Source: Convolutriloba macropyga (Eukaryota). Taken from it: a stretch of 64,000 nt of DNA. Below, piece after piece: positions 4,266-26,600 of the stretch (its first letter is position 1; each line of letters starts with the position of its first letter). The position numbers were made by a program, and so were the translations under genes. Under the pieces are notes generated by a model, which did not search any database, was not told the origin of the DNA, and saw only the letters and a program-made list of their open reading frames with translations. The stretch is from positions 744,001 to 808,000 of the forward strand of contig NC_134474.1 of the NCBI RefSeq assembly GCF_964194025.1, written 5' to 3'.

Positions 4266-5599
4266 CTAAGTATATGTTAGCTGTAAATTATGAACAAAAT
4301 TGATTGAAATTGAAGTTAGGAGTACAATTTTGCAAATTACGGAAAGAAATTTTTTCTTCTTAAAAATTTCTTTTTTAATGAACCAAGCCTCTCCTGCTCC
4401 GATAACGAAGCAGTCGTTTGTTTGTAGATGTTTGATTCAAGTGTTAGCTTTCTAACTAAGTCTAACTAACTTTAGCGCAAAAAAACATCAGGCATTTACT
4501 GTTTAAACTTGAGTTCAATCTTTAAAACTACACTCGCTGCCTCGAGGTTTTAGTGAACGATGAAATCGTACCCTGAGTTCTCTAAAACTCTCTGTATATA
4601 CGATTTCGAATTTTCGAAAGATAATTTTTTGAATTTCCGCTATTTTTCAAAATGAGCTTTAAAGTTTATGAGCACTATTGGCGAATAAACAGCTTTTTTA
4701 ACGGGAATATAAGGTTCATTTTTCATAGACGAGAAATATAGCAACAAATATACAGAGTTCTTGTTTGCTCCCGAAAATTTTTTCGGAAAAACCTTTCAAG
4801 GGCTCTCTTAGTCTCCCTAAGTTTTTATGGTTTGACATGGTTGCACATAGCGTCAAGAGAAATTGCATGTATCTATAGAAGAAATCGGCAAGGTGTGGAA
4901 CATTATGCGCTCTAATGAATTGTGGAGAGTGGTGCACAGAAACTTACTGTGGAAGTTAGTTCGTTCAGAACGCGGCAAAAATTCTGAGGACCATTTTGTT
5001 AGTGTGAAAAGTTCAAACTTATCTTTGTCTATCGTGGTTTTATGTGCACCAAACCTGTTTTTGAAAAAACTTTTTAGTCAGCGGTTTTAATTGAAATAAA
5101 GTGACGTTATTTTTGTATTCTAATTGATTTGTTTGTCAATGATGCTCGTACTGATTTTTTCACCTCACATTTAAGTTTTTGTTGATTCCAATTTTTTTTA
5201 ATTAATTTTAATCCACATTTTGCAATTTTGTTGCTGATTTGAAAAGTTATTATTGAATTCTATTAATCGGCCGTTCGGTGCTTCAGTAGAAATTTTGATA
5301 GAAAACTACCCAATATATAATTTGTAAAACCAGCACACCAGATATTCACTTGTGTTTCTATTTTGAAAAACATATGATCTCAAATAACAGAATTTTATCA
5401 TTCTTTCAATCACATATGAAGTCAACCAACGCTTTATACTGACGATTCGAGAGCACTTTTTCAACAATGGGACCCGTTTTTCTATTTCTTTGCACCCATA
5501 TTTATGTTTTATGTATTTTAGTCATTGGGATCATCCTGTACCGTACTGTGGCTTATTGTAGGAGCCTTGTTGTTAGTATCACACTCAAATTTGTTTCAG

Positions 5600-5680
5600 A
5601 GCTTTCGGATGACTGTGAGATCTTCATCGACCCAGAGACTGGCAAACTCTTCATGCGAACTAAGAGTGGAAACATTCTGG
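5600..5680 (+). CDS. Host gene exon, repeat 1 (ELSDDCEIFIDPETGKLFMRTKSGNIL)
   Basis: tttcag acceptor, gtagg donor, 81 nt, phase 1-1. Confidence 0.85.
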
Positions 5681-8600
5681 GTAGGTTCAAAAATGGTTCG
5701 AATATTGCATTACTTCGACGCCTCATACGTTTGGTTGAAATCAATCGTTGAGAACATTAAATTTATGATACGCACCACATATAACTGAAAAAATTTACAA
5801 GGAATTGAAGACAATATTTAAATTTACAAAGAGATAAATGTTTTTAAGTAAAAATTATAAGAGTTGGAATCTTGTAAAAATATTGCTAAGTGGCCGACAT
5901 TTGGTTGAGTAGGTGAGAATTCTACCAGATAACCTTTCTGTCCTATATGAGATTATTTATTTATATAATGTTTTTATTAACCTGTAATAATTAGTTCTAC
6001 CTCAGCTTTATTCTTACGAGGTATTTCTACCACACCTTAATTCTCAGTAAAGAGTTAGTGAGAACTTTCCGGTTGAAATATCTAGGAAGGTGGAATGGCT
6101 GTCTGACCAGCTAGATGTCTGGACGATTGGTGAACATTTGGGAGCTCATATAAATCATGATTTTATATGAAGTCAAAGATAATTGTGTCATGAGCAGGTC
6201 GGACACCATTTCGGAGCTTTTTTTCGAAATTATAGTGTCTTCCCCTGGTATAACTCATAAAATTCTATTGCCACAAGAAATGTCATAATGGTAGTTCCTT
6301 TTTTCATTTTGTTTGTTATATTTGTCGGCTGCAGATATCTTCAAAGTGGTGAAGGAAGTAGCTGCTGCTGCTAATGCTAATAATTCTCTATCCAACCAAA
6401 TCAAACTCGATGGCTCTGCAGCCCCACCCCCTGCCAAGAGCAAAAAGCTTAACAAAAAACCCTTCTTTGGTATGAAAATAGAGAGATCTTGAACCCTGTT
6501 TCAAGCATGTATTTCAAGTTACATCTGTAGATTTAGCTTACACTTATAAACATCTTAGTGTAGTTTTTTAATGCTTCATTTCAGATTCATTACTATGCCT
6601 CGGCTTTTAGACATCTACAATCTGAAAAAAAGTGAAATTTTTTAATTGTGTTTGTTTGTTTGCAGAAATGGGAGATGACATCACAATGTTCACAGATCCG
6701 AGAACAGGGAAGACCTATGTCAAAACAATGTCAGGAAGATTCATGGGTAAGCGCCAAAAAAGCCGGTTTTATAGCAGTAGCAATTTGTTTAATTTTCGTT
6801 AACGTTTTTGATTATCCTGTGAATTTTAACAATTTATTTAATTTTCGTAAACATTTTTGATTATCCTGTGAATTTTAACAATTTATTTAACTTTCGTAAA
6901 CATTTTTGATTATCCTGTGAATTTGGTCTAGTTGAAAATTGAATCATTTTCAGAATATGTTTCCTTTGTCCTTGTTAACATTTTTCATCCTGCAGCTGTG
7001 AACATAATAGTAGCTCTAGTATGTCTTTTCGAACTGATAATTGTTTCTATGCCCAGTATGAGGGCCCAGACCGAAAGTCAAATTGTCCAGACCGAATTTT
7101 AACAAACTAGAGGCGTCGTGCTTTGAAAAATACAGGGTCTGGAAGAATAATACTTGCCTTCTGGGACGGCCTGGACATTCCGATTTCTGTCTGGCACCTG
7201 AATCTGGTTAGCCCACTAGCGCGCCGTTATAAAGGGGTGAAAGTATTCACTGTCGTTTAGGTTTTTATGGTCTAGAAAAGAAAAGGAAACAGTTCCATTA
7301 GTAAAATTTTCGCAAATGATTTTAAATGCGGTTTGTTATTTCAGAGTTGGACGAAGATATGGAGGTGACAATTGATCCAGTAACTGGCAAAATGTTTGTC
7401 AGAACCAAATCGGGAACTCTTAAAGGTACCTCAAACTAACAGCCGCGCTCGAAAAAAACTAAGAGGGTCGATCTCATTATTTACAATAGAGCTGATTGAT
7501 AACTATTTTGTCCTGAAAAGTGTCTGGGAGGAAAATTGCTTTTTTGCTGTTCTGGAATCATTTATATTAATCAAACAATGTTAATTGCTTGCTTATGTGG
7601 TTTATTATGTTTACCGTTTTTTTTAGTCAAATGGCCACAAGAAGTTATAATAAATGTGCACTTGTCAAAACTTTCAATTACATTTCAATGCCAACTGTAA
7701 ATCTGATTTATTATTGCAAAAACAATGCATATTTCTGCGTTAAGCATTTTAAAAACTCGAGACGGCTTAACTCAGAGTGCTATAACTCCAGAAAGTTATC
7801 AAAATCAAGTTTGAAAATTTTCATTTTATGCGACGGCTAGTATGAAAAATTAGGACAAAACAATCAAAAAGATATACACAGAGAATTAGGTGCGTTAGCT
7901 TTTCATGAGTAATGGAAATATGCCTTGAACAAAAAAAACTGAGCCGCGTTTAAAACGCGTTTAAAATTTACTGATAAAATTGTGACTTATATTATTTACG
8001 CTTTTTGTCTTGTTTTTTTCATGTTTAAATTTTACATTTATCATTACCATTTTATGTTTTTTTCATTGTTTTGATTCCAATTGTTCTCATTCCAAATAAG
8101 AAGCCCCGCTCTAATGCTAGGCCACTTACTACTAAAATTGTGATACAAAAGCGATTACTTCTATTTTTCAAACAAAAAAAAACTGAGTCGGTGAAAACGC
8201 ATTTAAAATTTACTGATGAAACTCTGAACTAACTTATTTACAACTTTTTGTCTTGTTTTTTCATACATAAATTTTACATTACCGGTTTGTGTATCATTAA
8301 GCATTACCATTTTATGCTTTTTTCATTTTCCTGATTCCAATTGTTCTCATTCCATATAAGAGGCCCTGCTCTAATTCTAGGCCACTTACTAAAATTGCGA
8401 TACGAAAGCAATTACTTCTATTTTACGGTATAATGTTTTAGAAAACTTGAGCCGACTTTTTACCCAGGTGCTAAAACTCTTTTTTCGGCTGATGTAGGTT
8501 AACTTGGAACTAAGGCCCCTCTTGTTCGCAATTCATTTGACTTTAGCCTCATACTTGAGGTCAGAATATCAATCAACAAATTGATATTCTGACCTCAAGT

Positions 8601-11600
8601 ATGAGGCTGAAAAGCAAACTTTATCACTAATTTTTTCTTATGAAAATGGTAAAATATGAGAAAATTGGAGAAAAGACAAGACTGTATATCTTTGAATTAT
8701 ATTTCAAGAACCTATTTCAGATATATTGTTTTGATTTTTACAGTGCTTAATGATCCCAAAACAAAAGTTTTTCCATGAACTAATTATTTTGTTGTTTTTT
8801 TTTTAAAGTAAATTTACTTAAAGTTATCTTCAGTACAATGAAATTGTCTCCAATATAAAAAATTCAAGCGATGCAGTTGAAAATTAAACACCTGGTTTCT
8901 TGTTTTTTTAAACTCAGGAGTACCGATATCTATCTTTCTCAATTAGTTCCACAAAATTCTTGAAGTCCATCGTCCAAAGTTTACAAAAATTTCTATTTTG
9001 AAAACTTTTGGCTCAGTGATTTGAATTAGGGAAAATTAAAAAATAAAATTATTGTCGAAGAATTTTTGAGAAGCGGACATTTTAGTGGACCTCTTTGTAA
9101 AATTGGCTGACAATACGATTAAAAAATTGTAAAATTTAATTATACGTGACCACTAGTAACGGAAATAAAAAAATCAAGAAGATAATTACAAAACAATAGG
9201 GGTGTTAGTTTGTGTATGAGCAAGTGAAAAATCTCTCGAATAAAAGGTCACAATTTGAGAAGGTAAAAATGCTATAATGATTAGAGATGAAATTCCGAGC
9301 TCAAAATATAACGAATTTTTTTCATGTCTTTCATGCAAAAACTTTAGCATATCGTTCTGTTTTAGAGTATTATTCTGCTCGCTCGGTTCTTTACAATTTA
9401 AAATCAGGCTTCTTGATTTTCTTGAAGTTTAATTGTTCTCCTTCCAAATTGAAACACCTGTTTTAAATCTGGGCTGCCTACAAATAAAATGCTGTGCAAA
9501 CGCACCGAAATTGGTCTCCTTTTTCTATATTCAAGAAAAGATTTTTTTAAAAATCAAGACGACACTTTACCGAGCTAATGACACTTTTTTGGCAGGCGTA
9601 GGTTTAATTGGAACTAAAGTCTATTTTTGTTTGGAATTGTTTTGACTTTAGCCAGTTTTTTTCCGACCTCAGGGATATTCCGACCCAAAAAAAACTGACA
9701 TTCCGACCTCAAGCTAAGATTGAAAAATATATTGAGAAAATCTTTCCCTAAAAATTAATCGATTATGAGGAATTGAAGAAGTGACAAGACTGTACATGTT
9801 CATTTTTTTTCAAAACTTTATTCAGTTACAATTTTTATTGACTATATTATACTTGATTACACAAAAACAAAACCTTTTTCCGTGAGTTGGTGTTTGCTAT
9901 GTTTTGTTTTTGTACTGAATCTATTTTCAAAATAAATTTCTCCACAGTTGTCTTCAAAACAATGCAATTGTTTTGTCAACGAAAAATGTCAAGTGCTTTA
10001 GTTAAATACTAAGTATCTGCTGTTTTGTTACTCTCATCATAGAAATACATTGGTAGATTTTTCTTGACTAATTCCGGGAGAACCTACAAGACAAATGTGT
10101 GTCTGCAAATTTTCAGATATCGAAATCTATTGGCTCAGTGGTTTAAAATTTGGTCAATTGTTAAAGTGTTTATCTGTTAAAGGAATGTTAAGTAGTGGAA
10201 GTTTTCCAATGGTAATTTTTTAGAAAAGTTTCATTATAAATTTTCACTATAGGTGACTGCTAGTATTGAAAACAAAAAAAAAAGAATGTGTTAATTTATA
10301 GGTGTGTTAGCTTTTCGTGAGCAATACAAATATGCATTAATAAAGCAAAAAAAATTGAGCTGGTAAAAACGCTTTCAAGACAAATTGATGAAACTTCAAA
10401 ATTATTTTATCAAAATTTTTCTCTCGTCTTTTTTTTAGTGAAAATCAGTAAGAATAAACTTGGCTCGTAGATACCCGATCGAGCAAACAGTACACTAGAA
10501 GAGATTGGAACGGCAAAATTCTTGAAAAAAAAGACGAGAGAAAAATTTTGATAAAATAATTTTGAAGTTTCATCAATTTGTCTTGAAAGCGTTTTTACCA
10601 GCTCAATTTTTTTTGCTTTATTAATGCATATTTGTATTGCTCACGAAATGCTAACACACCTATAAATTAACACATTCTTTATTTTTTTGTTTTCAATACT
10701 AGCAGTCACCTATATAAATACTAGCAGTCACTCGTCTTTCATAAATTTTCACTATAGGTGACTGCTAGTATTGAAAACAAAAAATAAAGAATGTGTTAAT
10801 TTATAGGTGTGTTAGCATTTCGTGAGCAATACAAATATGCATTAATAAAGCAAAAAAAATTGAGCTGGTAGAAACGCTTTCAAGACAAATTGATGAAACT
10901 TCAAAATTATTTTATCAAAATTTTTCTCTCGTCTTTTTTTTCAAGAATTTTGCCGTTCCAATCTCTTCTAGTGTATTGTTTGCTCGATCGGGTATCTACG
11001 AGCCAAGTTTATTCTTACTGATTCCCCATTTTCAGTTGTTGTCATTTCAAATCAAAGCACCTTTTCTAATTCTGGGTTGCTCAATTATAAACATACATTG
11101 CAAAAAGTACCGAACAAGGTCTCATTTCTTTTTTTTTAAAATATTCGTTTAACGAAACTTGAACCGACATTTTACCGAGCTATAAAGAAGACTCATTTTT
11201 GGGCTGAAGTACGTTAAATTAGAACTAAAGTCAAACTGGTTCGCAATTCACTTGTGTTTAGCCTATTTGTTTTTCAATCAGTAAACTGACATCTTGACCT
11301 CAGGCTAAGACTAAATCAAAAATTTATTCAGAAAATTTTTCTTCAAAAAATATTCAAATATAAAGAATTGAAATAACAAGACTATATTTCTTAATTATAT
11401 TTAAAAAACACTTCACATGAAATGGTTTTTATTCTGTTTAATTACCCCAAAGCAAAACGTTTTTCCTTGAAATAGTTCCCGTGATGTTTCTTTTTTGTAT
11501 GGAAACTTTTTTCATAATAAATTTTTTTAAGTTGTTTTCAGTACAATTCATTAAAGCAAATAAAATATATTCTCGCAATGTAGATAAAAAACTAAATATT

Positions 11601-14600
11601 TGTCTTCGTGTTTTGTTTTTCATCTCGGAAATACAGTGGTCTATTTCTTAACTCATTGCTCAAAAATCTAGAAGACCATTGTCCGGTGTCCTCAATCGTT
11701 CAAGCATCGAAAACAATTGTCACAATAATTTTGCTATTGGAAAATTTTTGAGAAGTGTTTGCTATTTTGATGAACTTTTCAAACCGGCTCAGTTGCTAAA
11801 TAGAGCTATTTTGAGTTCGATTACCTAATTTCCATTCATTTCTTACCGTTCTGCAGCAGATATTTTTTGTTTTAAAAAATTGCTTCTAACCGCAGAAAAA
11901 TGATTTTTGTCGGTTATCAACAAAAATATCTGCTGCAGAACAATTGGTTATCAACAAAAAGTTTTTGTTGATAAACAACAACATGTATAAATGTTTTTGA
12001 CCGGTTAGATTTTTAGATCTTGAAAAAAATGGTGCTACCATCAGAAATATGAATTAAATGCTTGCTCGAGCTATAGTAATTGCGTTTTCTTTTGTCTTGC
12101 TTTGTCCATATTGATGGACTGATGTTCTGTTGTTCTCATTGGAAAATAGTCACCTTCATTTTCGTTCACAGAACTGGCATGTGAGATGGAGACGATAATC
12201 GACCCAATCACTGGAAAGAAGATTGTCCGGCCTAAAGGAGGTAGGAGCAGCAACTTTCCCCGAATGTGTTTAATTATATACAAACTTCAAGGTTACATCC
12301 CCAATTTATCTCACTTTGATAGTGTAAATTTATCAGTTTTTGTCGCTATTTCGTTTCTGTATTAACATTGAAAACAATTTTCAACTTTAATGTCATGAAA
12401 TTGAGAAATGTTCTCGTTACCAGGCAAAAACAACTTATCGGTTATCGGTGAGTTAACATATCACTTTTTGGACGCCATTTTTCACAAAGTCAAACTAAAT
12501 GTAGAGAATGAATTGATTTTTCGGAGTTTTTTTCTTTCCCAGTTTAGACCCAACCTTGCAATCATAAAATTCAAAATTATCTCTTCAAATCGGATGTAGA
12601 AAACATGCAGTGATGCTACCTCCAAACTTGAACCCGCCCCCTCCCATAAATTGCACTTCAACGCTATTTTAAAAAATTAAGGGTGAAATCCGGGTCCTAA
12701 AACGGGAAAGAACAACACGTGAGCATGATTTAGTATTCAATAGCACATATTTCATCCCAAAATTTGATCACGTCCTGTTTATAAAAAATTGCATCACTTT
12801 CACCACAATCGTCACTTTTTTCTTCATTTTCATCGTCCAGTTCAAACTTGTTCAACTTTAAAGATGAAATGTTCAAATTCTTCACTCTGATTTCGGGGAT
12901 TTCAGTTTGTTCATTCAATTTGACCGACTGGCCAAAAATGTCTTCATTTGTTTCATCTTTCATAACTCCACCAATCAGACGCATCGTTTTAAGACTCACA
13001 ATTTCATCAGTGCATGATTCATCGCCCTCTTTCGGCAGAAAATTGAACATGGATGGCATTTCGAAACCATGGCTGCAGTTTAGATAATCTGGTATGCAAT
13101 TTTCGTTGAAATATCTTGCTTTGTGCCTCTTGCTGACATAATCGTGTACTTTGAAATTTATGTTGATTTCAGGGTTCAATTTTAGCAAATATTGGGCAAA
13201 CTTTAATACCGGGTAGTCAATAAGAAAGTCGCCCAGCGCTTGGGATAAACTGTGGAAATGGGTACTTTTTATTTTGCTGAAAGCAACTCTTCTTTGTCTG
13301 TAGAATTCCGTTATCTTTGTCAAGTTTTCCTCTAAGCGAGAGTTCTCAGGCAGAAACCGTGAAAACATTGATCTAATGGTCAATTTGTAAAGTTCAAAGT
13401 CATCGTTCAGAAGTTTCTCCGTTTTCTCCTGGCCAATTAAACTCCATAAAAATAGTTCACCTTCGCCGTTAGCCACCGTTATCAGAATTTCTGGAATTTT
13501 TGATAATTTGGATAGAATTTTCGGTTCGCTGGATTTTAAATCGAAGTCGAGATAGGGTACAAATTTCAAAAGATTTCCTTGGGCGGTTAAATACTGTTTC
13601 ATGAACGCATCCGTAGACAGATTTTGGGTGAAATTTGAAATAGCAGATAGTTGAGAGTCGTTATCCGAGGCGGGTTTTTCAGTCGTAAAACCATTTTGGG
13701 TCAGAAATTCTCTGCTTTCTAAAATTGACTTCTGTGCGTCAGTTTCAAATCCAAAATAGCCAAGAGGAGCTGAAAAACAAATTATGATACAAAATCTCAT
13801 TTTAATGATCTTATAAAATAAAAAGTTGAATATTTTTCATGACATTTCGTCAAGTTTTTTTTTGTTTCTATACAAAAATACTGACCTCCACTCATAATGA
13901 TGTACTTTTTGAATAGAAGGCAGGATGGGTAAGGGTTTATCAGGTGATAGCCCACTGATCCACCCCCTACGCTGAACCCACTGAAACAATTTTCATCACA
14001 CTTGTTTTTTTTAGAAAAATATTTAATGTAGATAATCAAATGCAGAACAGTTATCCGCAGAAGTATGTGATCAAAGCACATCGAAGTAAGTAAACAAGCG
14101 GCATTTTTCGGATAATTTGTGCTAACTTTCCAAAACTACAACTGCTTTGTTCTTCATCTGACCTCTAGTAAACTGTAGATGGTTAATTTGTTAATTCTGT
14201 CAGAATATTACAATATGGTTCATTGTCTTACAAGATTTTCTGACAGAATTTTACAGAAATCATCCCGCCTCGTCCCAAGACTCCACTCGTAACCGCTATA
14301 TGTGATTTCTCAAATTCATTCTAAAACTGTCTTAATAAACTTTATTGAACTATTTCCTCTACTGTTTTTTTTTTGACAAAAACTACAGTTTCTGAAAATT
14401 TTCGATAATTAGGGAGGGTTGGCTTTGCAGCCCATTTGTATCAAGCTCGATTGTTGCATTTCATGCCATCGCAACGTACCATAAAGTTATGTTTTCTGTA
14501 TTCCCTCCAAAGAACTCAATATACTTCTGAACCCACTCGAAGGCCAGCTCCTGATCTCGGATTCCAACGTTTGTTTCCACACTCGAACCAGACAACTTTC

Positions 14601-17600
14601 CATCTCTCTTCTCCTCAGTTGGGTGAAAAAATCCCAATATTCCCAGTCTGTAGTTAAAGGTAGCTACAACTATATTCAATGCGGCACTTAATTTTGCCCC
14701 ATTGAAAGGGGGTTCGCATGCAGTGCCCTGTTGAAATGCCCCTCCGTGAACAAATATTAGCACGGGTTTCTTCAAATGAAGGGCTCTTCTCCTCACTAAT
14801 TCTAACTGAATCGCCACATTTTATTCGACGGAGAAAATTTCAGAGAAAACTCTGGTTCGCTGAAGTTGCCTTTTGTGATTTCATTTGTCTGACTTCTCGT
14901 TTTCCGTTTAAAAATTATAAATAATGCCATTTGGATACATCTGCTAAAAAAATAACATTGTTAATTTCCTCTGGTACACATAAGAATAAAAAGCAAATGG
15001 TAAAAGAGGCAATGTAAAATTAAGAAAATAACATTATGTAAAATTATAAAATCTTTAAATTACCTAACTACAAATTTGACCTTACATTAGTAAACAAATG
15101 GCCGAAAATGCGAGCATAAAATGTTCTCACAATTTTATATGTACAACATGGAGATTAAAGAAAAAAAACTAAATTAAAATATAATGCTCTCAATGTCATC
15201 TTTTATATCAGTTACTTATGGGTCCTTCAAAAATTCTTTCCAAAAATATTCTTTCAGTTCTTTTTTAAGGAAGCTTTCGATGTTGTTTTCCGTCTAATAT
15301 TAGAAGGCAGACTATTATAAATTGGAATGGCTTGTGCAATAAAAGAATCAGTTAAAAACTTATTGTTCTTTCTGATATCAAACGTTATTTTTTTGACCTC
15401 TCATGTTGTTTTTTTCTCATGGTAGAGAGAGGTTCAATTTTATATGCTGGAAGATCGTTGCTGAGTAAGCGAAAAAAATATTTTGAGCAATGACATTTCA
15501 AGAGAAAAGAAACTGGTAATATTTTGTTGCAAAGTTTGAGATCTGTAGACCGATCGTATTTTCTCCTATTAAAAATGGTTTTTATTCCCCAGTTCGATTG
15601 TTTTTCTAAAGTTGTGAGTAATGACTCTTGCAACCCTATCAGAATTAGAGCTGAATAATGTAGATGACTTATTACTACTGCATTAAGTAATAAGACTTTC
15701 GTTTTCTCTGGTTAAGTTTTACTTAGTGTATTCAAAACTTTTATTCCACAAGCCATTCTCTGAAGAATCTTTTTCAATTCTCCATCAATTTTTAGTTTGC
15801 TATCAATAATTGCGCCAAGATACTTCACACTACTTGATTTAGCTATTCTTTCATTGTCGACATTCAGAACAGTATTCGTCTGCGTACTGGACGGCCTTGC
15901 ATTACTTTTCTACAATCTTTGCTAAATCGTTGACGTAAGTGTTAAATAATAGAGGTCCTCAAATAGTATCTTGCGGATCTCCTCTTTTCAAATTTATCCA
16001 ATCTGATTCAATTCCATTCAGGACAACTCTTTGCGTTCTTTCACTCGAAACTTTCTTTATTAAATTGATAGCATGTTCTTCAAAACCTATATTTTCAAGT
16101 CTCCGTAACATTATTTTGTGGTTTATAGAATCAAAAGCCTTTGAAAGATCTAAAAACGCACCTGTAACATTTTTTTTCATGTTGAGTTCTAATCTTATTT
16201 GTTCTCTCGATTTCAGGATAGCATCAATTCTTGAAATGTGTTTTCTATAGCCAAATTGACTAAAAGACAAAAGTTGCTCCCGTTCTAGGAAACTTGTGAT
16301 TTGCGAACTGAACGCCTTTTCAAAAATTTTTGACAAAGCAGAAGTGACAGATATAGGCCTATAATTGAGTGGGTCTTCGGGATTTCCTTTTTTGAAGAGT
16401 TGAGTTACACAAGCTTTTTTAAGATCTTCTGGAAATTTTCCTTCTGTAATGAACTGATTAATGAGATAACATAAGGGTTCCGCTAGCGCTGCTTTAGCAT
16501 CTTTTTTTGCCCAGCTGGTATTTTTGAAGGACCGACTGGTTTGCTTGTATTCAATGAATCTATGAGCACAATTGTTTCCTTGGTTGTTATATATTGGAAC
16601 TTGGAACACTTTCTCGGAGCAGATTTAGGAAGAATGTTGTTTGTTTGTTGCAAGTCAATGAACTCCCCTAGAGTAGAAAATCTGTAATTTAGAAGATTTG
16701 CAATTTCCATAAGCTTTGTTATCTTATTACCAAAACTGTTTAATAAAGATTGAATTCTTGTTTGAATCTTTTCTTTATAACGAAGATCTTGAATGAGTTT
16801 CCATCTGGCTTTTTCACTTTTTAACTCCATAAAACTTGAGAGAAGTTGTTTTTCTTTTTGACGAATTTAATCGTTTTTATTTTCATCATCGCTTATTCTT
16901 GAAAACTCTCACATAGCCATTTTTCTTGAAGCAGAAATTTTGTATTGTCTTTTCTAATCTAACAGGCTTTAAATGCAGCATGTAGTGCTAATGTTGTTTC
17001 AATATTTCTTTGAAATTCTTATAACATCATATCTCGCGTCACTGCACCGTAAACGTGTCTCCAGTCTGAATTTTCAATAAAATTTTGGAACGCTATGGCT
17101 AAATAGTTTTTTTTTGTCAAAAAATTTTTTCTTTGTTGTTTTTGATTTTAGCATCACAGATTTAAGAACTGTGATTGTTGCAAAATGATCAGTTTTCAAA
17201 ATTGTATCCGCTACTATGCCTGATTCGTAATCGTCTGTTATGATATAATCGATAAAAGTTGAAGAAGAGTTAGCCCTTGTTGTAGCTGTATCAATATTCG
17301 ATGGTTTAAGATCATATGGAGAAATTACAGATTGTAGCAGATTTCTGTCGCGCTTTGCAAAATAATTTGAGTTGTAGTCTCCAGCAAGTATGACAGATTT
17401 TCTTTCGCCACAGCAAGCTCAATTCCCAGGACCCATTTTTCCAAAAACATCTTTTAAAAATTACTCATTTAGAACAACATCTTCACTATACACTATCATA
17501 TATTCGCCGAAACGTCATTAGACCACGGATACAAAATCAGAAAATGTAGAAACAGATATTGAAAATCAACTGGAAATGTAATTTGATGACCTTGTTTTCT

Positions 17601-20600
17601 TTGCTGAAAAGAGCCCTTATTGTTATTTGCCCCCATAGCTCCCTCGTCTGTCAATCGTCCAGTTGTAATTAGGTTTGAGTCTGACTTACAACTATTGGGC
17701 GAACCAACAGGAATCCAGACATTTATCCAAAGACAATCTTCGCCCTTCCAGCCCGCGTCGAGTTTTTTGACTTCTAAGTCATGATTTTCTTTCGCACATT
17801 CACTATTGCGCATTTCTGTCATTGTTGATTTGTCACTGCATTTAAGTCACTGCATTTAAATTAGAATTCTAAATAAAAGGTTATGAAAAGGTATTCGACG
17901 CGAGGAGTTTCCGGGTTCACTATGCTCAAGTGGGGGGCAGGTGAACGCTGTCAACAAAGTCAATTGTTATATCACATACATCTTGTGAAAAAATTAATTG
18001 TTCTAAACAATCCAAGACACCTTTCTAAGCGTAAAATTTGATGTGCGACATTGTTTATGGACCAATTTCCTCATTTTCAGTCACTATATTCCATCGTTGA
18101 AAATGGTAAATGAATCGTAAAAATGTTGGACATATTTTGTCACCTGATACCACAAAACGCAAATTTATTGAAATTTACCTGTCCGCCCATTGGCCTTGTA
18201 ATGACATCTGTTATGTCGATAACTATCAATAAAAATTTCATATTAAAATTTCATTAACTATCATTAAAAATTTCATAAAAACTTTCATATCTGGAAAACT
18301 GAAATGAACTGTTGAAAATTGATTTATTAAACTGGTGATCTGCTGTTTTATAAACCTAGTCATGGTAACCAAGTTAATTGTTAATTCAAATCACTTTTTG
18401 ATGAAAAAAATTATTAAAAATTGTTCAATTTTGTCCAATTTTTTTAAACTTTGGTCATGAATGTCATAGGAAACTAATTGTGTCAAACCTATTCTTGATT
18501 CCCAAATGTTAATATATTTTTTCACCTGAATAGCAGCTTTTCCATATTTGATTGCTTGATACGGACTCGTAGGGAGTTTCTCTAAAACATCGCATCGCCT
18601 TAACCTCTTTGTACCCACGGGTTGCTCCTGCACATAAGGAATACCAAGGAACTCTGCAACTTCAAAGGTTGCGGGTTCGAGTCCAGGAGGGGTCGAGTCG
18701 CTCGCCTTTGCGATTTGAACCTCTTTTTTGGTTCCTTGAATAACTCCAGCGGGAGTTATTACACAAATTTCAGATGAATGTTGCTTTTCGTTCTCCATTT
18801 TGCAAATAATTCAATGTTCTTTGACGAACAGCAATCTAATTCTGTATTGATCAGTGTTGAACATAACACAGGTTAAGTAATGCATTGTTTTGTTGAGTCA
18901 GCTTCAAACGGTATAGAGCAAATTTGCAATTCTATTCAGTAGAGCTGCAAAACATGTTACGTCTTATAAGAATAGAGTAACGTAAATTTTGGATTGTATT
19001 GTGGAGCCTAAAGAAACAAGAAAATTTTGTCTGATTACAGAGCGTCAAAGGAAAAGGGCGAAGAAAGCAAGCAACAGTTTGTAAAAATGTGACCACGAAG
19101 TGCATGTTTGCAATAAACAACGCTCGCTTACTATTAACATTTTCCTGTGATTGACTCTGCAAATGAATGTATGAAATCATTTAGTTAGGGAAAGATATAT
19201 ATTTCTGAGTTTAGAGCATAAAAGCCGAATTTATTATACTAATGAATATCTTAAATATGGGTTGTTTTTCTTGAAAATTTGCAAAACAATTCTTATCAAT
19301 TATGCAGCATTAAATGCCTAAATTTCTTACGCAAAACAAAATATACTCATCGCTGTGGGATTTACAATTACTCTGGTCAGATCGCCTCAAAAAGTAAAAA
19401 TTCGATTAAAAAATGGTTTATTGCGAAATTCAACCAAGTTTTTTAAGGTTGCTTTAATCTCCTAAATTTATGAGTGTCAGGTTGCAAAAATTATTTCAAT
19501 AAACCAAGAAACTGAAACCAAGATTTCAAAAAAGTTATTAGAAGCCTGTAGGAAATGAAACTATCAAAATTAATTGCGTGTTGCAAGGGGAGTTCTTTGC
19601 GAAAAGTTGATTTTTGTCTTCTAAGTGTGAGGTGCAATTAGAAACGAGAGAACATAATGCTCAATTAGGAACATTAACCTTTTTTAAATAAACTTGAGCA
19701 AATTGAGAAAAATGGGAGTAAAAACTGTCAATAAAGAAGTTTTAACATAGATTAGCTGACAATGGCTTTTCATAGATTTTAGAAACAGCCAACAATTTTT
19801 GTGCGTCTTAGAGTAATACTGGCACAATAAGCCGGTAATTGTGAAATCCTAATCAACAAAACCTTCTAAATAAAAACGTTTTTATCTTTTCACAGAACAG
19901 AGAGAATTCTTGTATCTACGACAAAAAAACATTACTACTATTAAAACCTCAGACTCATATCACCTCGAATCTAACTCATTTATTTGCGAGAAAGAATTTG
20001 AGAGAATTATTACAAAAAGCATTCATTAAGAAAAGAGCAAAATTTTTAATCTTCTTTTTGATGTACAATCAATTTTCTCATTTGATTAGGAAAGACCTAA
20101 TTAGAACGTAAAATCATCACAACTTAAAAAATTTAAATCAAAGATCAAAAATTTTTTACAGATTATGCAATAAAAGTTAACCACTTTTATGCAAATTTTT
20201 TGAACAAATGGATAATAATAAAACGCCATTACTGTAAAACTTGAAACTTATAAAAAAGAGAACAATATGGAAGAGTTATAAATTACTCAAAGTTGTGAAA
20301 AAAATGACTACTACTTTTTCAAAATAAAAAAGAAACCTCATTTTTGATTCGTGAGCTTAAAATAAAGCAAATCTCTTTGTCAATTGAAGTCTGCTTTGCA
20401 CAACAGTTATCCCAGTATGTCTCTTTTGTGTCCTTTTAAAAAAATCTCAAATTGTAAATTAGAATAACCAAGATGTAAAAGTGACATGTTGTAATATTAT
20501 TAATCAAAATTATCATATCTTCCTTTTGAATTTCTAAATAATAACTGAGATTTGCTTTTCTTCAACTATTTTGATAAAAAACAATTGAAGCCTTTAACTT

Positions 20601-23600
20601 TTTTGGTCCATTGGAACTTGTTTTTGTGTTTTTGCTTCTCTTCTCTTAACTTTTTGATTAATTTTCATTCTATTTTTCTTTTCTGAGATCTATTCGTATA
20701 TATTGTTCAAAGCTATGAAAATGTTTACTAACGCAGAGAAGATCAAAGAAAATAATTAAAACTAGCTAATTTTGAAATTAAATTTTCCAGCTTTTTGACA
20801 TGTCCTAGCAATATTGAGTGTGATACCTGTTGAGTGTGATGCAATTGAAATAAGAGCGAAAACGGATTTTTTAAAAAAAAACAGACGGGAAAACAGAGAT
20901 GTAACAGTAAAAGTATGAGTTTCTTGTTTTTAGTTCCTTTTACAATTGAGTGCAAATTTTGTCACCGATCATTAAATTTTCTGCGAATTTCTCCAATTTT
21001 TTGTTGAAACAATTATGTAAGTTTTTTAACACAAAAACTTGTGCTTTCTGCAATTATAGAAGTTATGGTAGATAAATGGGCCAGTCACGGGTGATATTTG
21101 CCTGAATAGATATAGAAGATTTTTCAAATCATAACAGCTCCTCATTCCAGATCTTAAAAGAAAGTGTATCATAAGGTATAAACTTTAATCATACTGTGCA
21201 AATGTCACAGTAGCTGTCCGGTATGCTCTTGCATTTAGCGCAGCGTGAAATATTCCACAAAAAATTGACCTTAAAGATTACGAAATTTTAAATGGTCCAA
21301 CCATTAAACATATGAAAATTTTACTCTCAATAATCAGTTATTTCAAGAAAAAATCAAGAAAGTTTATCCTGAAGTTATTTTATTTAAATGTACAGTTAAT
21401 CAAAGATTTTAAACCAAATTTAAGTTAAGCTATCCAGCAGGAGCTATCAATCGGAAGGATAATCCACACGCTGGCACAGTCACTCTCAGTAGTTGCGATT
21501 CATGGATCTGCGGTAATGTTGCTAGCTCGCGCGCCATGAGAGTCTCAGATGTTTATAGAGAACTTTCAGCTCACCAAATGAATTTGAAGTTTTTCAAAAG
21601 CTTCTAATTGGGGGTCTAGTCATCATCTTTAATCACGAATTTTTATTCTGGCCTGACGAAAGTCGCGAGAATAGAAACATAGATTTCATAAGAAAAATGA
21701 AATGGACTGATCAAAACTAATTCATCAAACTGTTGATATGTTGTTTTGATAAACATAGCCATGTTAGCCAAGTTAATTGTCAGTTCAAAAATACCCAGAA
21801 AAAAGTTTCAGTTAACCACGGCACGATTTAAGTTATTTCTTTCCTTTTTTGAAAGTGCTATATTTTTTCAGGCGTTGGTTTGGGTTTTGAACTGTACGTG
21901 GACCCAGAAACTGGCAAAACTTATCTCAGACCCAGAGACGGTAAGCCATAAGTGAAAGTTGTCGTGACTTGCTTGTGAGAAAGTTGAAATTAGTTTTTTC
22001 TTTCAACTCGCACTAAAAACTGATTGAAACAAAAATTTTGTTGCAATTTTCTGGAAGATATAAGCATGCGAGAAAAATGAAGTATTCGGGATTCATTTAC
22101 AGTAACAGGTTATAATAGTTGATACCTGTATGTGCATGAATGACATCCAATATGAAATATATCCATTTTATCATTAAAGCGTGGAAATATCTGAAAGCTG
22201 GATACAAACTGTTTTGAAGATAGTTTTCAAAGCAGTTAATTTGTAGCAGCTTTTATGTCATACTTATCATACCAAAAGAGCAATTGAATAAAGAATAGAA
22301 AAGATGACGTGATTGGTATAAGCTTTGTTATTAAATTACTAGACAATGGCCGTTATAACTAATATGAATGTATGTAGCCCGACTGTTTTATATCTATAGC
22401 ACTAATCAATCATGCAAAAAATAATTACAACGGGGAAAAAGATAAAACATCTGACAGCCGAAATGTGAGTTGGGAAACATATCGCGCATTTGGTCTTAAC
22501 TAATTTGTTTACATCTTAACTATAACTACTAACCAAACCCACTAACAGAAAAAGAGGAGAAACTGCTGCGTGACCTGGTGATGTTGGTTCGACCTGGTCT
22601 CGGGTTCTACGATGTGGACCCAGAAGACATCTTTGTGGACATGACGAGTGACGACTACAAGATGGAGTATGGCACTATGTCATGGACAGACCAGTTGCAG
22701 TCTATTGGGCAGAAGAACAAGGAGGGAGAACAGGGGAGAGAGGGAATGACAGCTGAGGAAAGGAGGAAGGCTGATGATCAACGTCACCTGGAGGAAAGTT
22801 AGTCATCCTGCTTTGCAAACAACGCCTAAAGTCACACCCCCCCCCCCTCCCACTTGTGACACATGCATATAGGTGAAATCGTTTGAAAAATTATGAACGA
22901 CTTTGCCAGGGACTGTTTTATCACAGGCTGTTTTGTCCAGACAAGGCAATGACAAGTGCTAATGTTCTGAGGCCTTGCATGAATGCAGTCAGTAATAATA
23001 AAGATAGTTTCTCGGTATCTCGTCGGTTGTTTTTGAAAACTCAATTTTTCTTCACCCGATGAAATTTTCCTCTCTTAATTATGATTCCTCCGATTTATTG
23101 AGGAAAATGTATTGATTGAGTTCATTTTGTTTCAGTAATATTTGCGATATCCTACGCCAAGAAAAGTATCATTTTTTCTAACATTTTACACTTTTCACAT
23201 CTTTTTGTTGATTTCGTTCAGTCTTTCACGTGTACCATCCCAATCCACCTTTGAATTTTAGCAGTGATAATGGTATTTATTAATTGTAATGGATAGGAAC
23301 GCCTCCTATTAGTCTCTGCAGAGTTTGTTGCTGCAAAAGTGCTCATCATTTTGTGCACACAAGGGTAAAATCATAAAACTATGTTCATGGGCGAAGTGGA
23401 AGCTGATTTATTATCAAATTAACTTTAAGGAAATTCGACTATGTGTTCTCAAGCTCTAAAACGCAGAAATAGTAGAAAATTTTTTGCAGTTAATTTTTTG
23501 CTTTACATATAAACCCTCGCACCCATTGAAAAGCGTTTGAGGCAAACTTTTTGAAAACTCAACTACTTAAAGTTGCAGCCTCCATCGGTTCACGATTTTT

Positions 23601-26600
23601 TGTGTCTTATGCAAAAATTGCTGTGAACGCAAATTAAGCCAAAATGATGGCAAGCCGTCGTAAAAACACACCGAATGTTATGCAACATTTATGTAATTTC
23701 TCAGAAATAATGTGCCGCAAACCAATACAATCGAGACAGCGTATACCATTTCAATCTGAAGTGTGTTTCAGTGCAATTAAGAAACAAAAATAAGGTCCAT
23801 TTTAGAGATTTAGTGAATGCGATCCCTAGAGGATCGCTGTCTATGGCCATGTGTCATCCATATGTCTCATCCTCTGTGGTATTTCATCCAAAATTTCCCG
23901 CAAAGCCACAAACTTTGGCCAATCTAAAAATCTTTTGGCCAACTTTCTACCATTTTCAATTTTTGGCTTGCTTGCCCATCGTTTTGTTTGAACGCCGCCA
24001 AAATTCTTCACAACATCTCTCCGAAATGTTTGTCATGTAAGATCTCATCCATAAATTTATATCTTTTAATATACGATAAATCATTTGTCTCTACACAAGC
24101 TGTATCATCTGTTGCATATAATGAAACCAGTTGTNNNNNNNNNNNNNNNNNNNNNNNNNNNNNNNNNNNNNNNNNNNNNNNNNNNNNNNNNNNNNNNNNN
24201 NNNNNNNNNNNNNNNNNNNNNNNNNNNNNNNNNNNNNNNNNNNNNNNNNNNNNNNNNNNNNNNNNNNNNNNNNNNNNNNNNNNNNNNNNNNNNNNNNNNN
24301 NNNNNNNNNNNNNNNNNNNNNNNNNNNNNNNNNNTCACAAGCACTTTTAGGTATTTAAAATGGTTCTCAAGTATTCACGTAATAATTGGGAAATAAAGTT
24401 TTAGTCTAATTACGAGTAAAAAATTGTTTGAAATGGATTACATTTATCCGCGAAAACTCATGGCATACTCATGACATGCATACTCATGACTTTGTATAAT
24501 CTGAACTTCGCTATTGAAAAATCAGACTGTATTGTCGGAAAGTTTTCCAAACTTTGCTTTTTTTCTATTTAGGAAGGTTTCATTCTTTCTCTGATTTTTA
24601 GTTGTATCGTTCTTCCTTATTGCACATTTCCAACCTTTTGTCAAAAAACAACTCTTGCTTGAGATCTGTGTCTTTTTTAGTGGCGCAGAAGATGAAAGAT
24701 GGGAAAGGAAAAGGGAGGAAACTGGGCGGAGGACGCAAAGGAGCGTAAGTTGACAGCTAACCCCCCCCCCCCTCCTTACCCACGATTATCTCTTACATCA
24801 ATACAAGGCTGGGAGTTAGTTATTAATAAGAGTAATATTATATAACCGCCTGAGTCCTACTAAGGAAGAATTGGGGTAATTCTAGATTTTTATTCGATCA
24901 TGAAAATTGTGATAATAATTTTTCTACGAATAAATTATTTTTAAAATCTCATACTCGTAAGTCAAAATCCTCGGAACCCAAAATAATACCCGAAAAATTG
25001 TGGGCGTTTATAGAAGTAATGTTATCATTCAGTAAGAGAAATGAATTTATCCAACAATTGCGACCAAATTGATAAAACTGGTCATTTTGTTCTAGGAAAG
25101 CCTCCGACAGCAAAACTCCGGCTGTGAAAACAAAAGACACATCATTAACGAAAGCTGGTTCAAAAGAACAGTCAAGAGCAGTGGCCAAAGTAGAAAAGGT
25201 GGTCAGAATAGTCACAACTCTGGCTTCATCCACTGATCATCATCCAGCACACAAAGGTGGTCAATCTGTGGGTGGGCTGAAAGGTCAGGATAAACCTTTT
25301 CCTCAAGTTTGGAATATTTTATAAGTTGTGAAAGAGAGAAAACTGATTGGGAATGGTACCCTTTATAGTGTGGCTTCTAGGGCACAAAATTTCAATCACG
25401 AAACCAATTTAACCTTAACGCAGTAAATGTCTTGCCGGGTTGAAGTTTGTTTGATTTCATACAAAGATCATATATAATTTCATACTGTCCGTATTTCATT
25501 TCTTACAATGATCTTAGTAATAAACCAAAGAGATCATATATGATTCTTGTGTGACTATTAAGATTATAATCATACAAGGAGATTATAGTCATATTAAGAT
25601 TATAGTCATACAAGGAGATTATAGTCATATTAAGATTAAAGTCATACAAAGAATCATATATGGCCTAGTATGAAACCACAGAAATTTGTATTATGTGTGA
25701 CCCGGGTAGGTGTGTTTTAAAAAAGAAGTTCCTCTTTTCTGCTTAGCCAATCAGATTTTGAATATTTCAAGATTTTAGCAAAAATCATGGAATCAATTTG
25801 CATGAAAAATAATTCAAAGCTTGCACCTAAGTTTTTGAGAAGCGACCAATTGCATGATGCGATTTCAACAACATAATTAAACGTCCTTAGTAATTTTCTC
25901 CAGTTCAGAAGCTATCAATGTCCATATGGAAGAAATAATTTTAGGCAAAGAAAAATACGGATCAGAGAGCAAATTCGACAAACAGAAATCTGGCGCAACT
26001 GCCGATCACGATTCTTTAAAGCCTGGATTCGATCAGCCAGTTATATCAGTGACTATTACTGAAAAGAAAACATCAAGTGAAAGTCTCCGTGATAGAAAAG
26101 TTTCAACTCAGGAAAAATTTAGAAAGAGTGAGAAACCTTCAAAGTTACTTCGACAACAAGCAGATTCATCTATGACACCATTTGCACAATCATTAGCTGG
26201 AAAACTGAAAGGATTACACGCACTCGAACACCACGAAAAAGTCAAAGTGGATCAAGAAATCAAAAACAGAATGACAAAAGCCATCAACAAGGCTCGAGTT
26301 TTTGAGTCAATCACAAACAAGAAGTTTCGTGAAGAACCACCCCCAATTTCAGTCACAGACGAGGACGGTGGTGAAAAACAGGAAAACAATTTGGGGCAAA
26401 AAGCTGGAGTACAAAGTTCATCTTCAAAAAGTCCGTCTCCGCAGAGAGGGAGGAAAACAGGGCAGTATTTGGCCCCGCCTTCTCCTCAAGGTCCGAAAGG
26501 AGGCAAAGGTGCTAAAGGGACCAAGGTAAGGACTTGTGATGACGTTGGTTGAATGTTGAGGTTAATCTCTCTTAAGAAAGTTAGGAAAACTTAGGAAATT

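What the first reader, a model, noticed from the sequence alone, without database searches (positions are those of the whole stretch)
5600..21940. Exon-encoded D-P-x-T-G-K repeat array fused to a KIAA2012/DUF4670-like protein
Seen: five tiny exons (81, 81, 81, 69 and 69 nt, all phase 1-1), mostly missed by the ORF track, each encode one unit of roughly E-L/M-x-D-D-x-E-(hydrophobic)3-D-P-x-T-G-K-x-F/Y-x-R-T/P-K-S-G. They splice in frame into the coiled-coil gene. Established: symmetric exons can be duplicated or skipped freely, and DPxTG is a common beta-hairpin turn. Inference: a modular, possibly undescribed beta-hairpin repeat domain grown by exon duplication and tunable by exon skipping. 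I do not recall it in vertebrate KIAA2012.
Basis: partly seen in the sequence, partly recalled or inferred. Interest (0 to 1): 0.75.

Follow-up and report, generated by a model that had tools for sequence, protein, structure and literature searches.

The report
Acoel beta-hairpin repeat gene's last exons
The five tiny exons are real, strongly conserved coding exons, but they are only the tail of a roughly 28-unit repeat array in a 100-kb acoel-worm gene. That gene belongs to an unnamed protein family with no detectable link to KIAA2012, and its function is still unknown.

Summary
Observation confirmed. Five + strand exons (81, 81, 81, 69, 69 nt) have AG/GT borders in phase 1-1, and each encodes one D-P-x-T-G-K unit.

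No RNA could be reached, because the four runs found were genomic DNA. Comparative evidence is strong instead. In two related unnamed assemblies only the exons align and the splice sites are kept. Over exons 1-5, 119 of 126 residues are identical while synonymous sites are saturated (pS 0.80, pN 0.025).

- The genome is the acoel Convolutriloba macropyga.
- About 23 more units lie 17-48 kb upstream on the same strand. In a relative they sit about 90 nt before exon 1, so this is one gene of about 102 kb with at least 28 units.
- A conserved 135-nt non-repeat exon (6335-6469) between unit exons 1 and 2 was missed.
- At least four paralogous loci carry collinear arrays, so these five units were not recently duplicated.
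- In paralogues the array and the coiled coil share one ORF, so the coiled-coil tail belongs to the family.

The DUF4670/KIAA2012 label is not supported (9.3 bits against a 27-bit cut-off). No named Pfam repeat fits. Among 1.84 billion representative proteins, true units occur only in unnamed genomic ORF fragments.

An AlphaFold2 model of a paralogue gives an all-beta meander (pLDDT 70). Exon skipping and function remain untested.

The parts
5600..5680 (+). Unit exon 1 (81 nt, phase 1-1), encoding (E)LSDDCEIFIDPETGKLFMRTKSGNIL. It is the fifth unit from the end of the array.
   Evidence: Splice sites and phase. Orthologous exons in L032 and L033 keep AG/GT. Its best matches are the fifth-from-end units of paralogues C13 and C1 (75% identity).
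6335..6469 (+). Linker exon 1b (135 nt, phase 1-1), not a repeat unit.
   Evidence: Both ends are conserved in L032 and L033, and the differences in KKLNKKPFF are synonymous. Pyrimidine tract plus AG at 6333-6334 and GT at 6470. Whether it is constitutive or alternative is unknown.
6666..6746 (+). Unit exon 2 (81 nt, phase 1-1), encoding (E)MGDDITMFTDPRTGKTYVKTMSGRFM.
7345..7425 (+). Unit exon 3 (81 nt, phase 1-1), encoding (E)LDEDMEVTIDPVTGKMFVRTKSGTLK.
   Evidence: The orthologous ORF fragment P0049 diverges right after the donor.
12172..12240 (+). Unit exon 4 (69 nt, phase 1-1), encoding (E)LACEMETIIDPITGKKIVRPKG. It is the penultimate unit and carries the family-typical KKxxRPKG.
21872..21940 (+). 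Unit exon 5 (69 nt, phase 1-1), encoding (G)VGLGFELYVDPETGKTYLRPRD. It is the last unit of the array.
   Evidence: The two variants seen in DNA runs are both synonymous.
22549..22797 (+). Exon 6 (249 nt, phase 1-1), encoding (E)KEEKLLRDLVMLVRPGLGFYDVDPEDIFVDMTSDDY... It holds a degenerate unit-like stretch followed by an acidic region.
   Evidence: sequence. Its first 57 residues are conserved in L033/L034.
24681..24744 (+). Exon 7 (64 nt, phase 1 to 2), encoding (M)AQKMKDGKGKGRK...
   Evidence: Conserved with the same phases in L035.
25904..26525 (+). Exon 8 (622 nt, phase 2 to 0), Ser/Lys/Glu-rich and probably disordered. The borders are the best splice candidates only.
   Evidence: The core 26025-26315 is conserved at 62% amino-acid identity in L034/L035. 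Splice candidates.
26845..26995 (+). Exon 9 (151 nt, phase 0 to 1), ending ...KVDWRKMNPG.
   Evidence: The link from here (phase 1) to the next known exon (phase 0) is unresolved.
32136..32302 (+). Family-defining exon IDLDKLSPAERRRIEVLRKRRQKELEKK..., the start of the coiled coil (phase 0 to 2).
   Evidence: It is 84% identical to the orthologue. It matches NLDD-IDLSKLSPEERARV, which directly follows the last unit in paralogue ORFs. The acceptor is conserved.
45409..45590 (+). Glu/Arg/Lys-rich coiled-coil exon. The borders are approximate.
   Evidence: It is collinear with the orthologue at 56% identity.
54310..54444 (+). Terminal coding stretch ...NQELSRAFVYSYFELMRIMDNLEEGSQDGQGED, with the stop codon. 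It carries the family's C-terminal motif. The 5' border was not determined.
   Evidence: tblastn with the last ORF of the compact paralogue (L031:15195-15536) gives 47% identity over 45 residues and ends at the stop.

Best explanation
The five exons are the last five repeat units of one large gene of the acoel worm Convolutriloba macropyga. The gene runs from about 47.8 kb upstream of the window (putative start MSDDGEMEYYIDPETG, no signal peptide) to window position 54444, a span of about 102 kb.

Its product has three parts:
1. At least 28 units of 21-27 residues, with consensus h-E-h-h-T-D-P-x-T-G-K-x-Y-h-R-T-K-S-G-x-h-x-E.
2. A poorly conserved charged region (exons 6-9).
3. A Glu/Arg/Lys-rich coiled coil that begins with IDLDKLSPAERR and ends with the motif NQxLSRxFVxSYF.

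The gene is one of at least five paralogous loci in this genome. The family has so far been seen only in this genome and in a few related, unannotated assemblies. It is not a KIAA2012/DUF4670 orthologue and fits no named Pfam repeat.

Shown: the exons are under strong purifying selection in this reading frame. The array is old and collinear between paralogues. In this gene, introns fall at one fixed phase-1 point of the unit.

Inferred (moderate): each 27-residue unit folds into a three-stranded antiparallel mini-sheet like a Trp-less WW domain. D-P-x-T-G-K and K-S-G are the two tight turns, and successive units join into one long beta-meander rod.

Inferred (weak): the C-terminal coiled coil pairs or bundles these rods, and the protein is an intracellular structural scaffold or spacer, possibly attached to the cytoskeleton.
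For: Exon anatomy and phases.

Purifying selection: only the exons align with L032/L033 and AG/GT are kept. Over exons 1-5, 119 of 126 residues are identical, with pS 0.80 and pN 0.025. Three of four exon variants in DNA runs are synonymous.

One gene with the upstream array:
- 108 unit matches in the genome, 28 of them on C7 on the same strand.
- The unit order is collinear with paralogue C13, where the unit before exon 1 and exon 1's counterpart lie in one ORF.
- In L033 the upstream two-unit exon ends about 90 nt before the exon 1 orthologue.

Same gene as the coiled coil:
- Paralogue ORFs hold the last units and the coiled coil together.
- The window has the IDLDKLSPAERR exon and the terminal NQELSRAFVYSYF exon.
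- The orthologue is collinear from exon 5 to the coiled coil.

No signal peptide.

Not a known family. An HMM search of 1.84 billion representatives gave 73 hits, and true units occur only in unnamed ENA or NCBI genomic ORF fragments.

Fold: AlphaFold2 gives 23 short strands, no helix before the tail, and pLDDT 70. The unit aligns by chance-level sequence to ubiquitin's first hairpin MQIFVKTLTGKTI.

Organism: the assembly size of 1,175,981,408 bases equals the 1,175.98 Mb in PMC13650328.
Against: - No transcript was seen. The only runs found were genomic DNA.
- The reading frame cannot be carried from exon 9 (ends in phase 1) to the IDLD exon (starts in phase 0) with the exons found. At least one exon or an unusual splice site is missing.
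- The structure model is of a paralogue, not of the window's spliced product. It has only middling confidence (pLDDT 70, pTM 0.40).
- No solved or predicted structure matches it well: Foldseek TM at most 0.22, VIA Z at most 3.1, Atlas TM at most 0.36. The rod-like assembly is therefore not established.
- Nothing bears directly on cellular location or partners.
- The relatives' species are unknown, so 'acoel-restricted' rests on absence from annotated proteomes.
Confidence: 0.6

Rival explanations
1. One reading: a short five-unit module, recently grown by exon duplication, fused to the N-terminus of a KIAA2012/DUF4670 orthologue.
For: The downstream exons are Glu/Arg/Lys-rich coiled coil, as DUF4670 is. 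One exon gives a faint PF15709 match (9.3 bits, E 0.89). All exons are symmetric, which permits duplication.
Against: PF15709 finds nothing in the whole genome by exon-wise search, and nothing on the other coiled-coil exons. The array has at least 28 units. The five units correspond position by position to units of paralogues and orthologues. The tail with its own motifs is shared by all paralogues, so it is the family's own tail.
Confidence: 0.06
2. Two genes: the repeat array ends at or soon after exon 5 or exon 9, and the coiled-coil exons from 32136 on belong to a separate downstream gene.
For: The reading frame cannot be joined between exon 9 (phase 1) and the exon at 32136 (phase 0) with the exons found. 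No RNA evidence exists. About 5 kb of intron lie between exon 9 and 32136. The long introns between the coiled-coil exons further downstream carry an LTR retroelement.
Against: In compact paralogues the last unit and IDL(D/S)KL(S/T)P.ER are in one ORF. The same order, units then exons 6-9 then IDLD exon then coiled coil, is kept in the orthologue. No start codon context or 5' exon for a separate gene was seen.
Confidence: 0.1
3. Same gene model, different role: the product is a secreted or extrusome structural protein, for example of sagittocysts or rhabdoid glands, rather than an intracellular scaffold.
For: Convolutid acoels make needle-like extrusomes whose proteins are unknown (own knowledge). 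Long repeat arrays with a coiled-coil tail suit a fibre. The family seems restricted to the lineage.
Against: The putative N-terminus MSDDGEMEYYIDPETG has no signal peptide and starts directly with a unit. There are no Cys-rich or glycosylation-type features. The very strong sequence constraint over all positions is more typical of intracellular assemblies.
Confidence: 0.1
4. The exons are relics: an untranscribed or decaying gene copy.
For: No RNA evidence was obtained. The gene is bloated to about 102 kb with transposons and a nested gene in its introns.
Against: pN/pS is about 0.03 with saturated synonymous sites. Splice sites are intact in three species, and there are no stops or frameshifts in any exon.
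Confidence: 0.02

Closest known systems
KIAA2012 / DUF4670 (Pfam PF15709)
   Same: It has a long Glu/Arg/Lys-rich coiled-coil C-terminal half. Proteins of this type are little characterised.
   Different: There is no significant profile match (9.3 bits against a 27-bit cut-off on one exon, nothing elsewhere or genome-wide). The tail has its own conserved motifs, IDLDKLSPAERR and NQxLSRxFVxSYF, shared with paralogues.
DUF4585 (PF15232), DUF6440 (PF20037) and PepSY (PF03413)
   Same: All contain a h-x-h-D-P-x-T-G-K-x-Y type hairpin. Multi-unit ORFs of the family add up to 28-41 bits against them.
   Different: Only about half of each profile is matched. Usually no single stretch is significant, and three unrelated families are hit at once. 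Single window exons give nothing. This is a shared turn motif, not membership.
WW domain (PF00397)
   Same: It has about 27-35 residues, three short antiparallel strands and a G-(K/R)-x-Y-h pattern after the first turn. The model gives three strands per 27-residue unit.
   Different: Both signature tryptophans and the terminal proline are absent. Pfam scores are 11.9-16.3 bits against a cut-off of 26.9. The units are fused head to tail without linkers.
Beta-hairpin tandem repeats: MORN, choline-binding / cell-wall-binding repeats, clostridial CROPs, and the CPAP G-box (TCP10) single-layer sheet
   Same: They share a unit size of about 20-27 residues, one hairpin per unit, and elongated all-beta assemblies. 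Choline-binding modules, glucansucrase repeats, CROPs and the CPAP G-box are among the weak Foldseek matches, alongside beta-propellers.
   Different: TM-scores are only 0.13-0.22. There is no sequence or Pfam match. These proteins are bacterial surface or toxin proteins, or centriolar proteins. MORN did not appear in any search.
Gastropod uncharacterised proteins: Patella vulgata XP_050412857.2 (LOC126827500) and Plakobranchus ocellatus GFO14402.1
   Same: They are the only named eukaryotic proteins with clear hits (E 7e-14 and 5e-15). They hold five or six copies of K-T-Y-I-R-T-K-S-G-R-L-V-E-K and one V-V-D-P-I-T-G-K-K-Y.
   Different: Only the second half of the unit is matched (profile positions 17-29). 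Their period is about 60 residues with an added, probably helical, segment, and the tail is different. Homology or convergence is undecided.

Membership tests
KIAA2012 / DUF4670 (PF15709) | A match to the 521-position DUF4670 profile at or above the curated 27 bits | tested here: not met
   no candidate in the whole 1.18-Gb genome by exon-wise search; only 9.3 bits, E 0.89, on 32136-32303, and nothing on the other coiled-coil exons or on the paralogue tails. Caveat: the exons were scanned one by one, not as a spliced protein.
KIAA2012 / DUF4670 (PF15709) | Orthology (reciprocal best hit or synteny) with KIAA2012 of other animals | not testable with these tools
   No KIAA2012 reference sequence was on hand. 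The length filter of the search for homologous proteins prevents exon-sized queries from reaching full-length proteins.
DUF4585 (PF15232) | A whole-domain match (73 positions) above 27 bits | tested here: not met
   21-31 bits in total on multi-unit paralogue ORFs, covering only profile positions 5-44. The genome-wide exon search peaks at 25.4 bits. Single window exons give no hit at E up to 10. The same ORFs also hit DUF6440 and PepSY.
WW domain (PF00397) | Two conserved Trp about 20-22 residues apart, and a profile score of at least 26.9 bits | tested here: not met
   The scores are 11.9 and 16.3 bits. The unit consensus has no Trp.
MORN / choline-binding / CROP hairpin repeats | A profile match to the repeat, or a clear structural superposition | tested here: not met
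   No Pfam hit at E up to 10. Foldseek TM is at most 0.22, VIA Z at most 3.1 and Atlas TM at most 0.36.
Unnamed acoel D-P-x-T-G-K repeat / coiled-coil family (defined here) | Tandem 21-27-residue units with near-invariant D-P-x-T-G-K and a following S/D-G turn | tested here: met
   (alignments A1, A2); the five window units score 52-69 bits against their own profile, and other loci up to 58 bits.
Unnamed acoel D-P-x-T-G-K repeat / coiled-coil family (defined here) | The last units KKxxRPKG and GhxLYVDPxTGKxYLR, followed by I/V-D-L-x-K-L-S/T-P-x-E-R and a C-terminal NQxLSRxFVxSYF | tested here: met
   the window exons at 12172, 21872, 32136 and 54310 match these elements of paralogues C13 and C1 and of locus L031, in the same order.

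The most novel reading that the evidence does not exclude
The units are Trp-less WW-like three-stranded modules fused without linkers into a continuous beta-ribbon tens of nanometres long. That would be a repeat architecture with no solved counterpart. It would define a family of structural proteins, possibly specific to acoels or xenacoelomorphs, in which one exon equals one structural unit. Inclusion or skipping of the phase 1-1 exons, including the basic linker exon 1b, would then set the length of the rod.
Probability: 0.2. Interest if true: 0.65.

Novelty: new variant of a known kind. Interest (0 to 1): 0.45.

Why it matters
Acoels sit at a disputed, deep position in animal phylogeny, and their genomes are barely annotated. 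This work defines a multi-gene family that is under very strong constraint: 94% protein identity where synonymous sites are saturated. The family is invisible to Pfam and absent from annotated proteomes.

The result has three practical uses. It gives annotators a concrete gene model with tiny exons that ORF-based and homology-based predictors will miss. It supplies a clean example of one structural unit per symmetric exon next to paralogues that hold the same units in single large exons, which is useful for studying intron gain and loss. It also offers a candidate new all-beta repeat architecture for structural study.

The finding corrects a tempting but unsupported KIAA2012 label. Its value is limited because the function is unknown and no transcript evidence could be obtained here.

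Tried and rejected
- RNA evidence: the look-up of sequencing runs on the 627-nt exon gave four runs of unknown kind. Read laying on 18135-24134 showed contigs running straight through introns, so these are genomic DNA with no splice joints.
- Pfam on single exons: nothing.
- Solved-structure sequence search: only spurious polyubiquitin hits through the MQIFVKTLTGKTI hairpin.
- ESM Atlas by features, tried twice: no usable hit.
- Fold searches (PDB Foldseek, VIA wide, Atlas): no convincing match.
- The search for homologous proteins with the 442-residue array ORF: only itself and one 85%-identical ENA protein, and no transcript-derived proteins.
- DUF4585 literature: two incidental mentions. 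KIAA2012 literature: nothing that bears on this.
- Search for a small exon bridging exon 9 (phase 1) and 32136 (phase 0), using tblastx or blastn between orthologous introns and an enumeration of AG...GT intervals: none was conserved.
- Recent exon duplication: rejected. Within-window unit identities are 33-62%. Units 1, 2 and 4 match their positional counterparts in paralogues better, at 62-75%.
- A link between the nested carboxylesterase and the host gene: rejected. It is absent from the orthologous intron.

Full report
**1. What is in the sequence**

The window is AT-rich (about 33% G+C) animal DNA with retroelements. A six-frame scan for D-P-x-[TS]-G-[KR] gives five matches, all on the + strand and none elsewhere in the 64 kb.

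Around each match there is a pyrimidine tract plus AG upstream and a GTAGG, GTAAG or GTACC donor downstream. These define exons 5600-5680, 6666-6746, 7345-7425, 12172-12240 and 21872-21940, of 81, 81, 81, 69 and 69 nt.

The spliced product reads ...LSDDCEIFIDPETGKLFMRTKSGNIL-E-MGDDITMFTDPRTGKTYVKTMSGRFM-E-LDEDMEVTIDPVTGKMFVRTKSGTLK-E-LACEMETIIDPITGKKIVRPKG-G-VGLGFELYVDPETGKTYLRPRD.

**2. Are the exons real?**

No RNA could be used. The single run search returned four runs of unstated kind. When laid on 18135-24134 they turned out to be genomic DNA, because their contigs run through the introns and show no splice joints.

Comparative evidence replaces RNA. A profile of the unit found ORF fragments in unnamed ENA assemblies. 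Three of their contigs were fetched.

- In L033 (ERZ26859043) the only stretches that align with window 5000-23000 are the five exons, exon 6 and one extra block. They align at 75-85% nucleotide identity and in the same order, and the introns do not align at all.
- L032 (ERZ25074608) shows the same for exons 1 and 2.
- AG and GT are kept at the same positions.
- Over exons 1-5, window versus L033 has 119 of 126 residues identical. About 66 of 84 synonymous sites differ (pS 0.80, saturated), against pN 0.025.
- Three of the four variants seen inside exons 5 and 6 in the DNA runs are synonymous.

These exons are translated in this frame and are under strong purifying selection.

**3. The array is much larger, and it is one gene**

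The window is C7:744001-808000 of a 1,175,981,408-base assembly. That size equals the 1,175.98 Mb reported for the acoel Convolutriloba macropyga (PMC13650328).

A profile of the five units finds 108 matches in this genome. Twenty-three more lie on the same strand of C7 at 699.8-727.3 kb, in exons of one to three units. The rest form arrays on C13, C1, C3 and the unplaced contig C714.

The order of units on C7 is collinear with the array on C13. On C13 the counterpart of the last upstream unit (LVSDGSVLFDPATGKSYMRTKSGK) and the counterpart of window exon 1 (ISDDAEIMIDPLTGKLVMRTKSGK) are adjacent in a single ORF. In the orthologous contig L033 the upstream two-unit exon ends only about 90 nt before the exon 1 orthologue. 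The 22-kb gap in C. macropyga is therefore an intron.

A putative first exon, MSDDGEMEYYIDPETG, lies at C7:696233 and has no signal peptide. The gene thus has at least 28 units and spans about 102 kb.

**4. A missed exon**

Between unit exons 1 and 2 there is a block conserved in both relatives. In the window it is 6335-6469, 135 nt long. It has a pyrimidine tract plus AG before it and GTATG after it, and it is phase 1-1.

It encodes DIFKVVKE...AKSKKLNKKPFF. In the relatives it is 69 nt long. The differences in KKLNKKPFF are synonymous. It is not a repeat unit, and the paralogues lack it. Whether it is constitutive or alternative is unknown.

**5. The link to the coiled coil, and the KIAA2012 label**

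In the compact paralogues the last two units run on, in one ORF, into NLDD-IDLSKLSPEERARVLA... and a coiled coil. The final exon carries ...NQNLSRTFVFSYFQ... followed by the stop.

The window holds the same elements in the same order. IDLDKLSPAERRRIEVLRKRR lies at 32136-32302. Glu/Arg/Lys-rich exons lie near 45.4, 50.3 and 51.3 kb. The terminal stretch NQELSRAFVYSYF... with its stop lies at 54310-54444.

Between exon 5 and 32136 lie four more exons, with these phases:

| Exon | Coordinates | Phase |
|---|---|---|
| 6 | 22549-22797 | 1 to 1 |
| 7 | 24681-24744 | 1 to 2 |
| 8 | 25904-26525 | 2 to 0 |
| 9 | 26845-26995 | 0 to 1 |

All four are conserved and collinear in the orthologue, as are the IDLD exon (84% identity) and the next coiled-coil exon. 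The coiled coil is therefore this family's own tail, in the same gene.

One gap remains. Exon 9 ends in phase 1, and the conserved acceptor at 32136 is phase 0. I found no bridging exon.

The DUF4670 label fails. PF15709 finds no candidate in the whole genome. On the window's exons it gives only 9.3 bits (E 0.89, cut-off 27) on one exon. The caveat is that the exons were scanned singly.

**6. Is the unit a named repeat?**

Single exons hit nothing in Pfam. Long multi-unit ORFs of paralogues collect 28-41 bits against DUF4585, DUF6440 and PepSY at once. These scores cover about half of each profile and mostly lack any single significant stretch. In the genome-wide search DUF4585 stays below its cut-off. 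This is a shared D-P-x-T-G-K turn motif, not membership.

An HMM of 48 units, searched against 1.84 billion representative proteins, gave only 73 hits at E of 0.001 or better. Full-length units occur only in unnamed genomic ORF fragments. A second search found just one more protein.

The nearest named proteins are gastropod hypothetical proteins that share only the Y-I-R-T-K-S-G-R-L-V-E half of the unit.

**7. Structure**

The spliced window product cannot be given to the tools by reference. I therefore modelled the paralogue ORF L031:14000-14680, whose units 4-8 correspond to window exons 1-5, using a 29-row alignment.

AlphaFold2 gives mean pLDDT 70 and pTM 0.40, with 23 short strands and no helix until the coiled-coil start. 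Each 27-residue unit forms three strands: one before D-P, one after T-G-K, and a short one after S-G. The 21-residue units form two strands.

The fold searches give only weak likenesses. They point to choline-binding modules, glucansucrase repeats, CROPs and the CPAP G-box (TM at most 0.22), with Z at most 3.1 and TM at most 0.36.

**8. Exon duplication and skipping**

Within the window the units are 33-62% identical to each other. Units 1, 2 and 4 are 62-75% identical to the units at the same position from the end in paralogues on other chromosomes. Those paralogues have their own orthologues in the diverged relatives. The five units are therefore old.

Exon structure differs between paralogues:
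- C13 and L031 hold six to seventeen units per exon.
- C1 has an intron at another point, phase 2 inside the Arg codon of S-G-R. That intron is absent from a relative's ORF, P0003.
- Many exons of the C7, C3 and C714 copies end at the same phase-1 point after S-G-x-L-x.

An ancient origin by duplication of symmetric exons, followed by intron loss in some copies, is plausible. Repeated intron gain is not excluded.

C13 also carries a tandem copy, with a period of about 5.6 kb, of a 12-unit block. The orthologous contig (L031) has that block only once. This shows either block-wise growth or an assembly artefact in a genome with 3.65% heterozygosity. Exon skipping remains untested.

**9. Verdict**

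It is partly wrong: this is not KIAA2012-like, not a five-unit array and not a recent duplication.

The most likely nature is an intracellular structural protein made of a long beta-meander rod and a coiled-coil stalk. It belongs to a family so far seen only in this acoel and a few related unannotated assemblies. Its function is unknown.

Noticed in passing
window 12730-18798 (- strand): A carboxylesterase-type gene (FVHGGAFQQG motif; ORFs at 18391-18798, 17496-17822, 14461-14817 and 12730-13800) lies on the opposite strand inside the intron between unit exons 4 and 5. A LINE reverse-transcriptase fragment (15959-16830) sits in one of its own introns. tblastn finds no trace of the esterase in the orthologous intron of the relatives, so the nesting is lineage-specific.
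   Followed up: partly
G000:C13:29640983-29648869 (loci L016, L024): The C13 paralogue holds two nearly identical tandem copies, with a period of about 5.6 kb, of a 12-unit block. The orthologous contig L031 has the block once, as one 442-residue ORF. This is either a recent block duplication that lengthens the array or a false duplication in a highly heterozygous assembly.
   Followed up: no
L017:2325-5500 (G000:C1, - strand): The C1 paralogue has an intron of about 3.2 kb in phase 2 inside the Arg codon of K-S-G-R. The letters ATAC occur both at intron positions 3-6 and at the start of the next exon. A related species' ORF (P0003) reads straight through this point, so the intron was gained or lost recently.
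   Followed up: partly
window 35982-41277 and 60000-63200: An LTR retrotransposon (gag, protease, RT, integrase ORFs) sits in the intron between the exons at 32136 and 45409 of the host gene. A LINE lies downstream of the gene's end.
   Followed up: no
window 26996-32135: The reading frame cannot be carried from exon 9 (donor in phase 1, conserved) to the conserved phase-0 acceptor at 32136. No conserved small exon was found between them in either species. About 12 nt after the exon 9 donor (GGTGCTTT) are also conserved.
   Followed up: partly
proteins P0053, P0063, P0065, P0070, P0072 and P0046, P0047, P0071 (hits): Two other unnamed repeat families built on D-P-K-T-G-K turns turned up in unannotated eukaryote-like contigs. 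One reads VTDPKTGKPVQQIVQTVIDPKTGKPTQV. The other has a unit of about 50 residues of the type h-Y-V-D-P-K-T-G-K-x-x-h-K-h-K. Their origin was not determined.
   Followed up: no
window 24135-24334: A run of 200 N lies in the intron between exons 6 and 7. It was left as it is.
   Followed up: no
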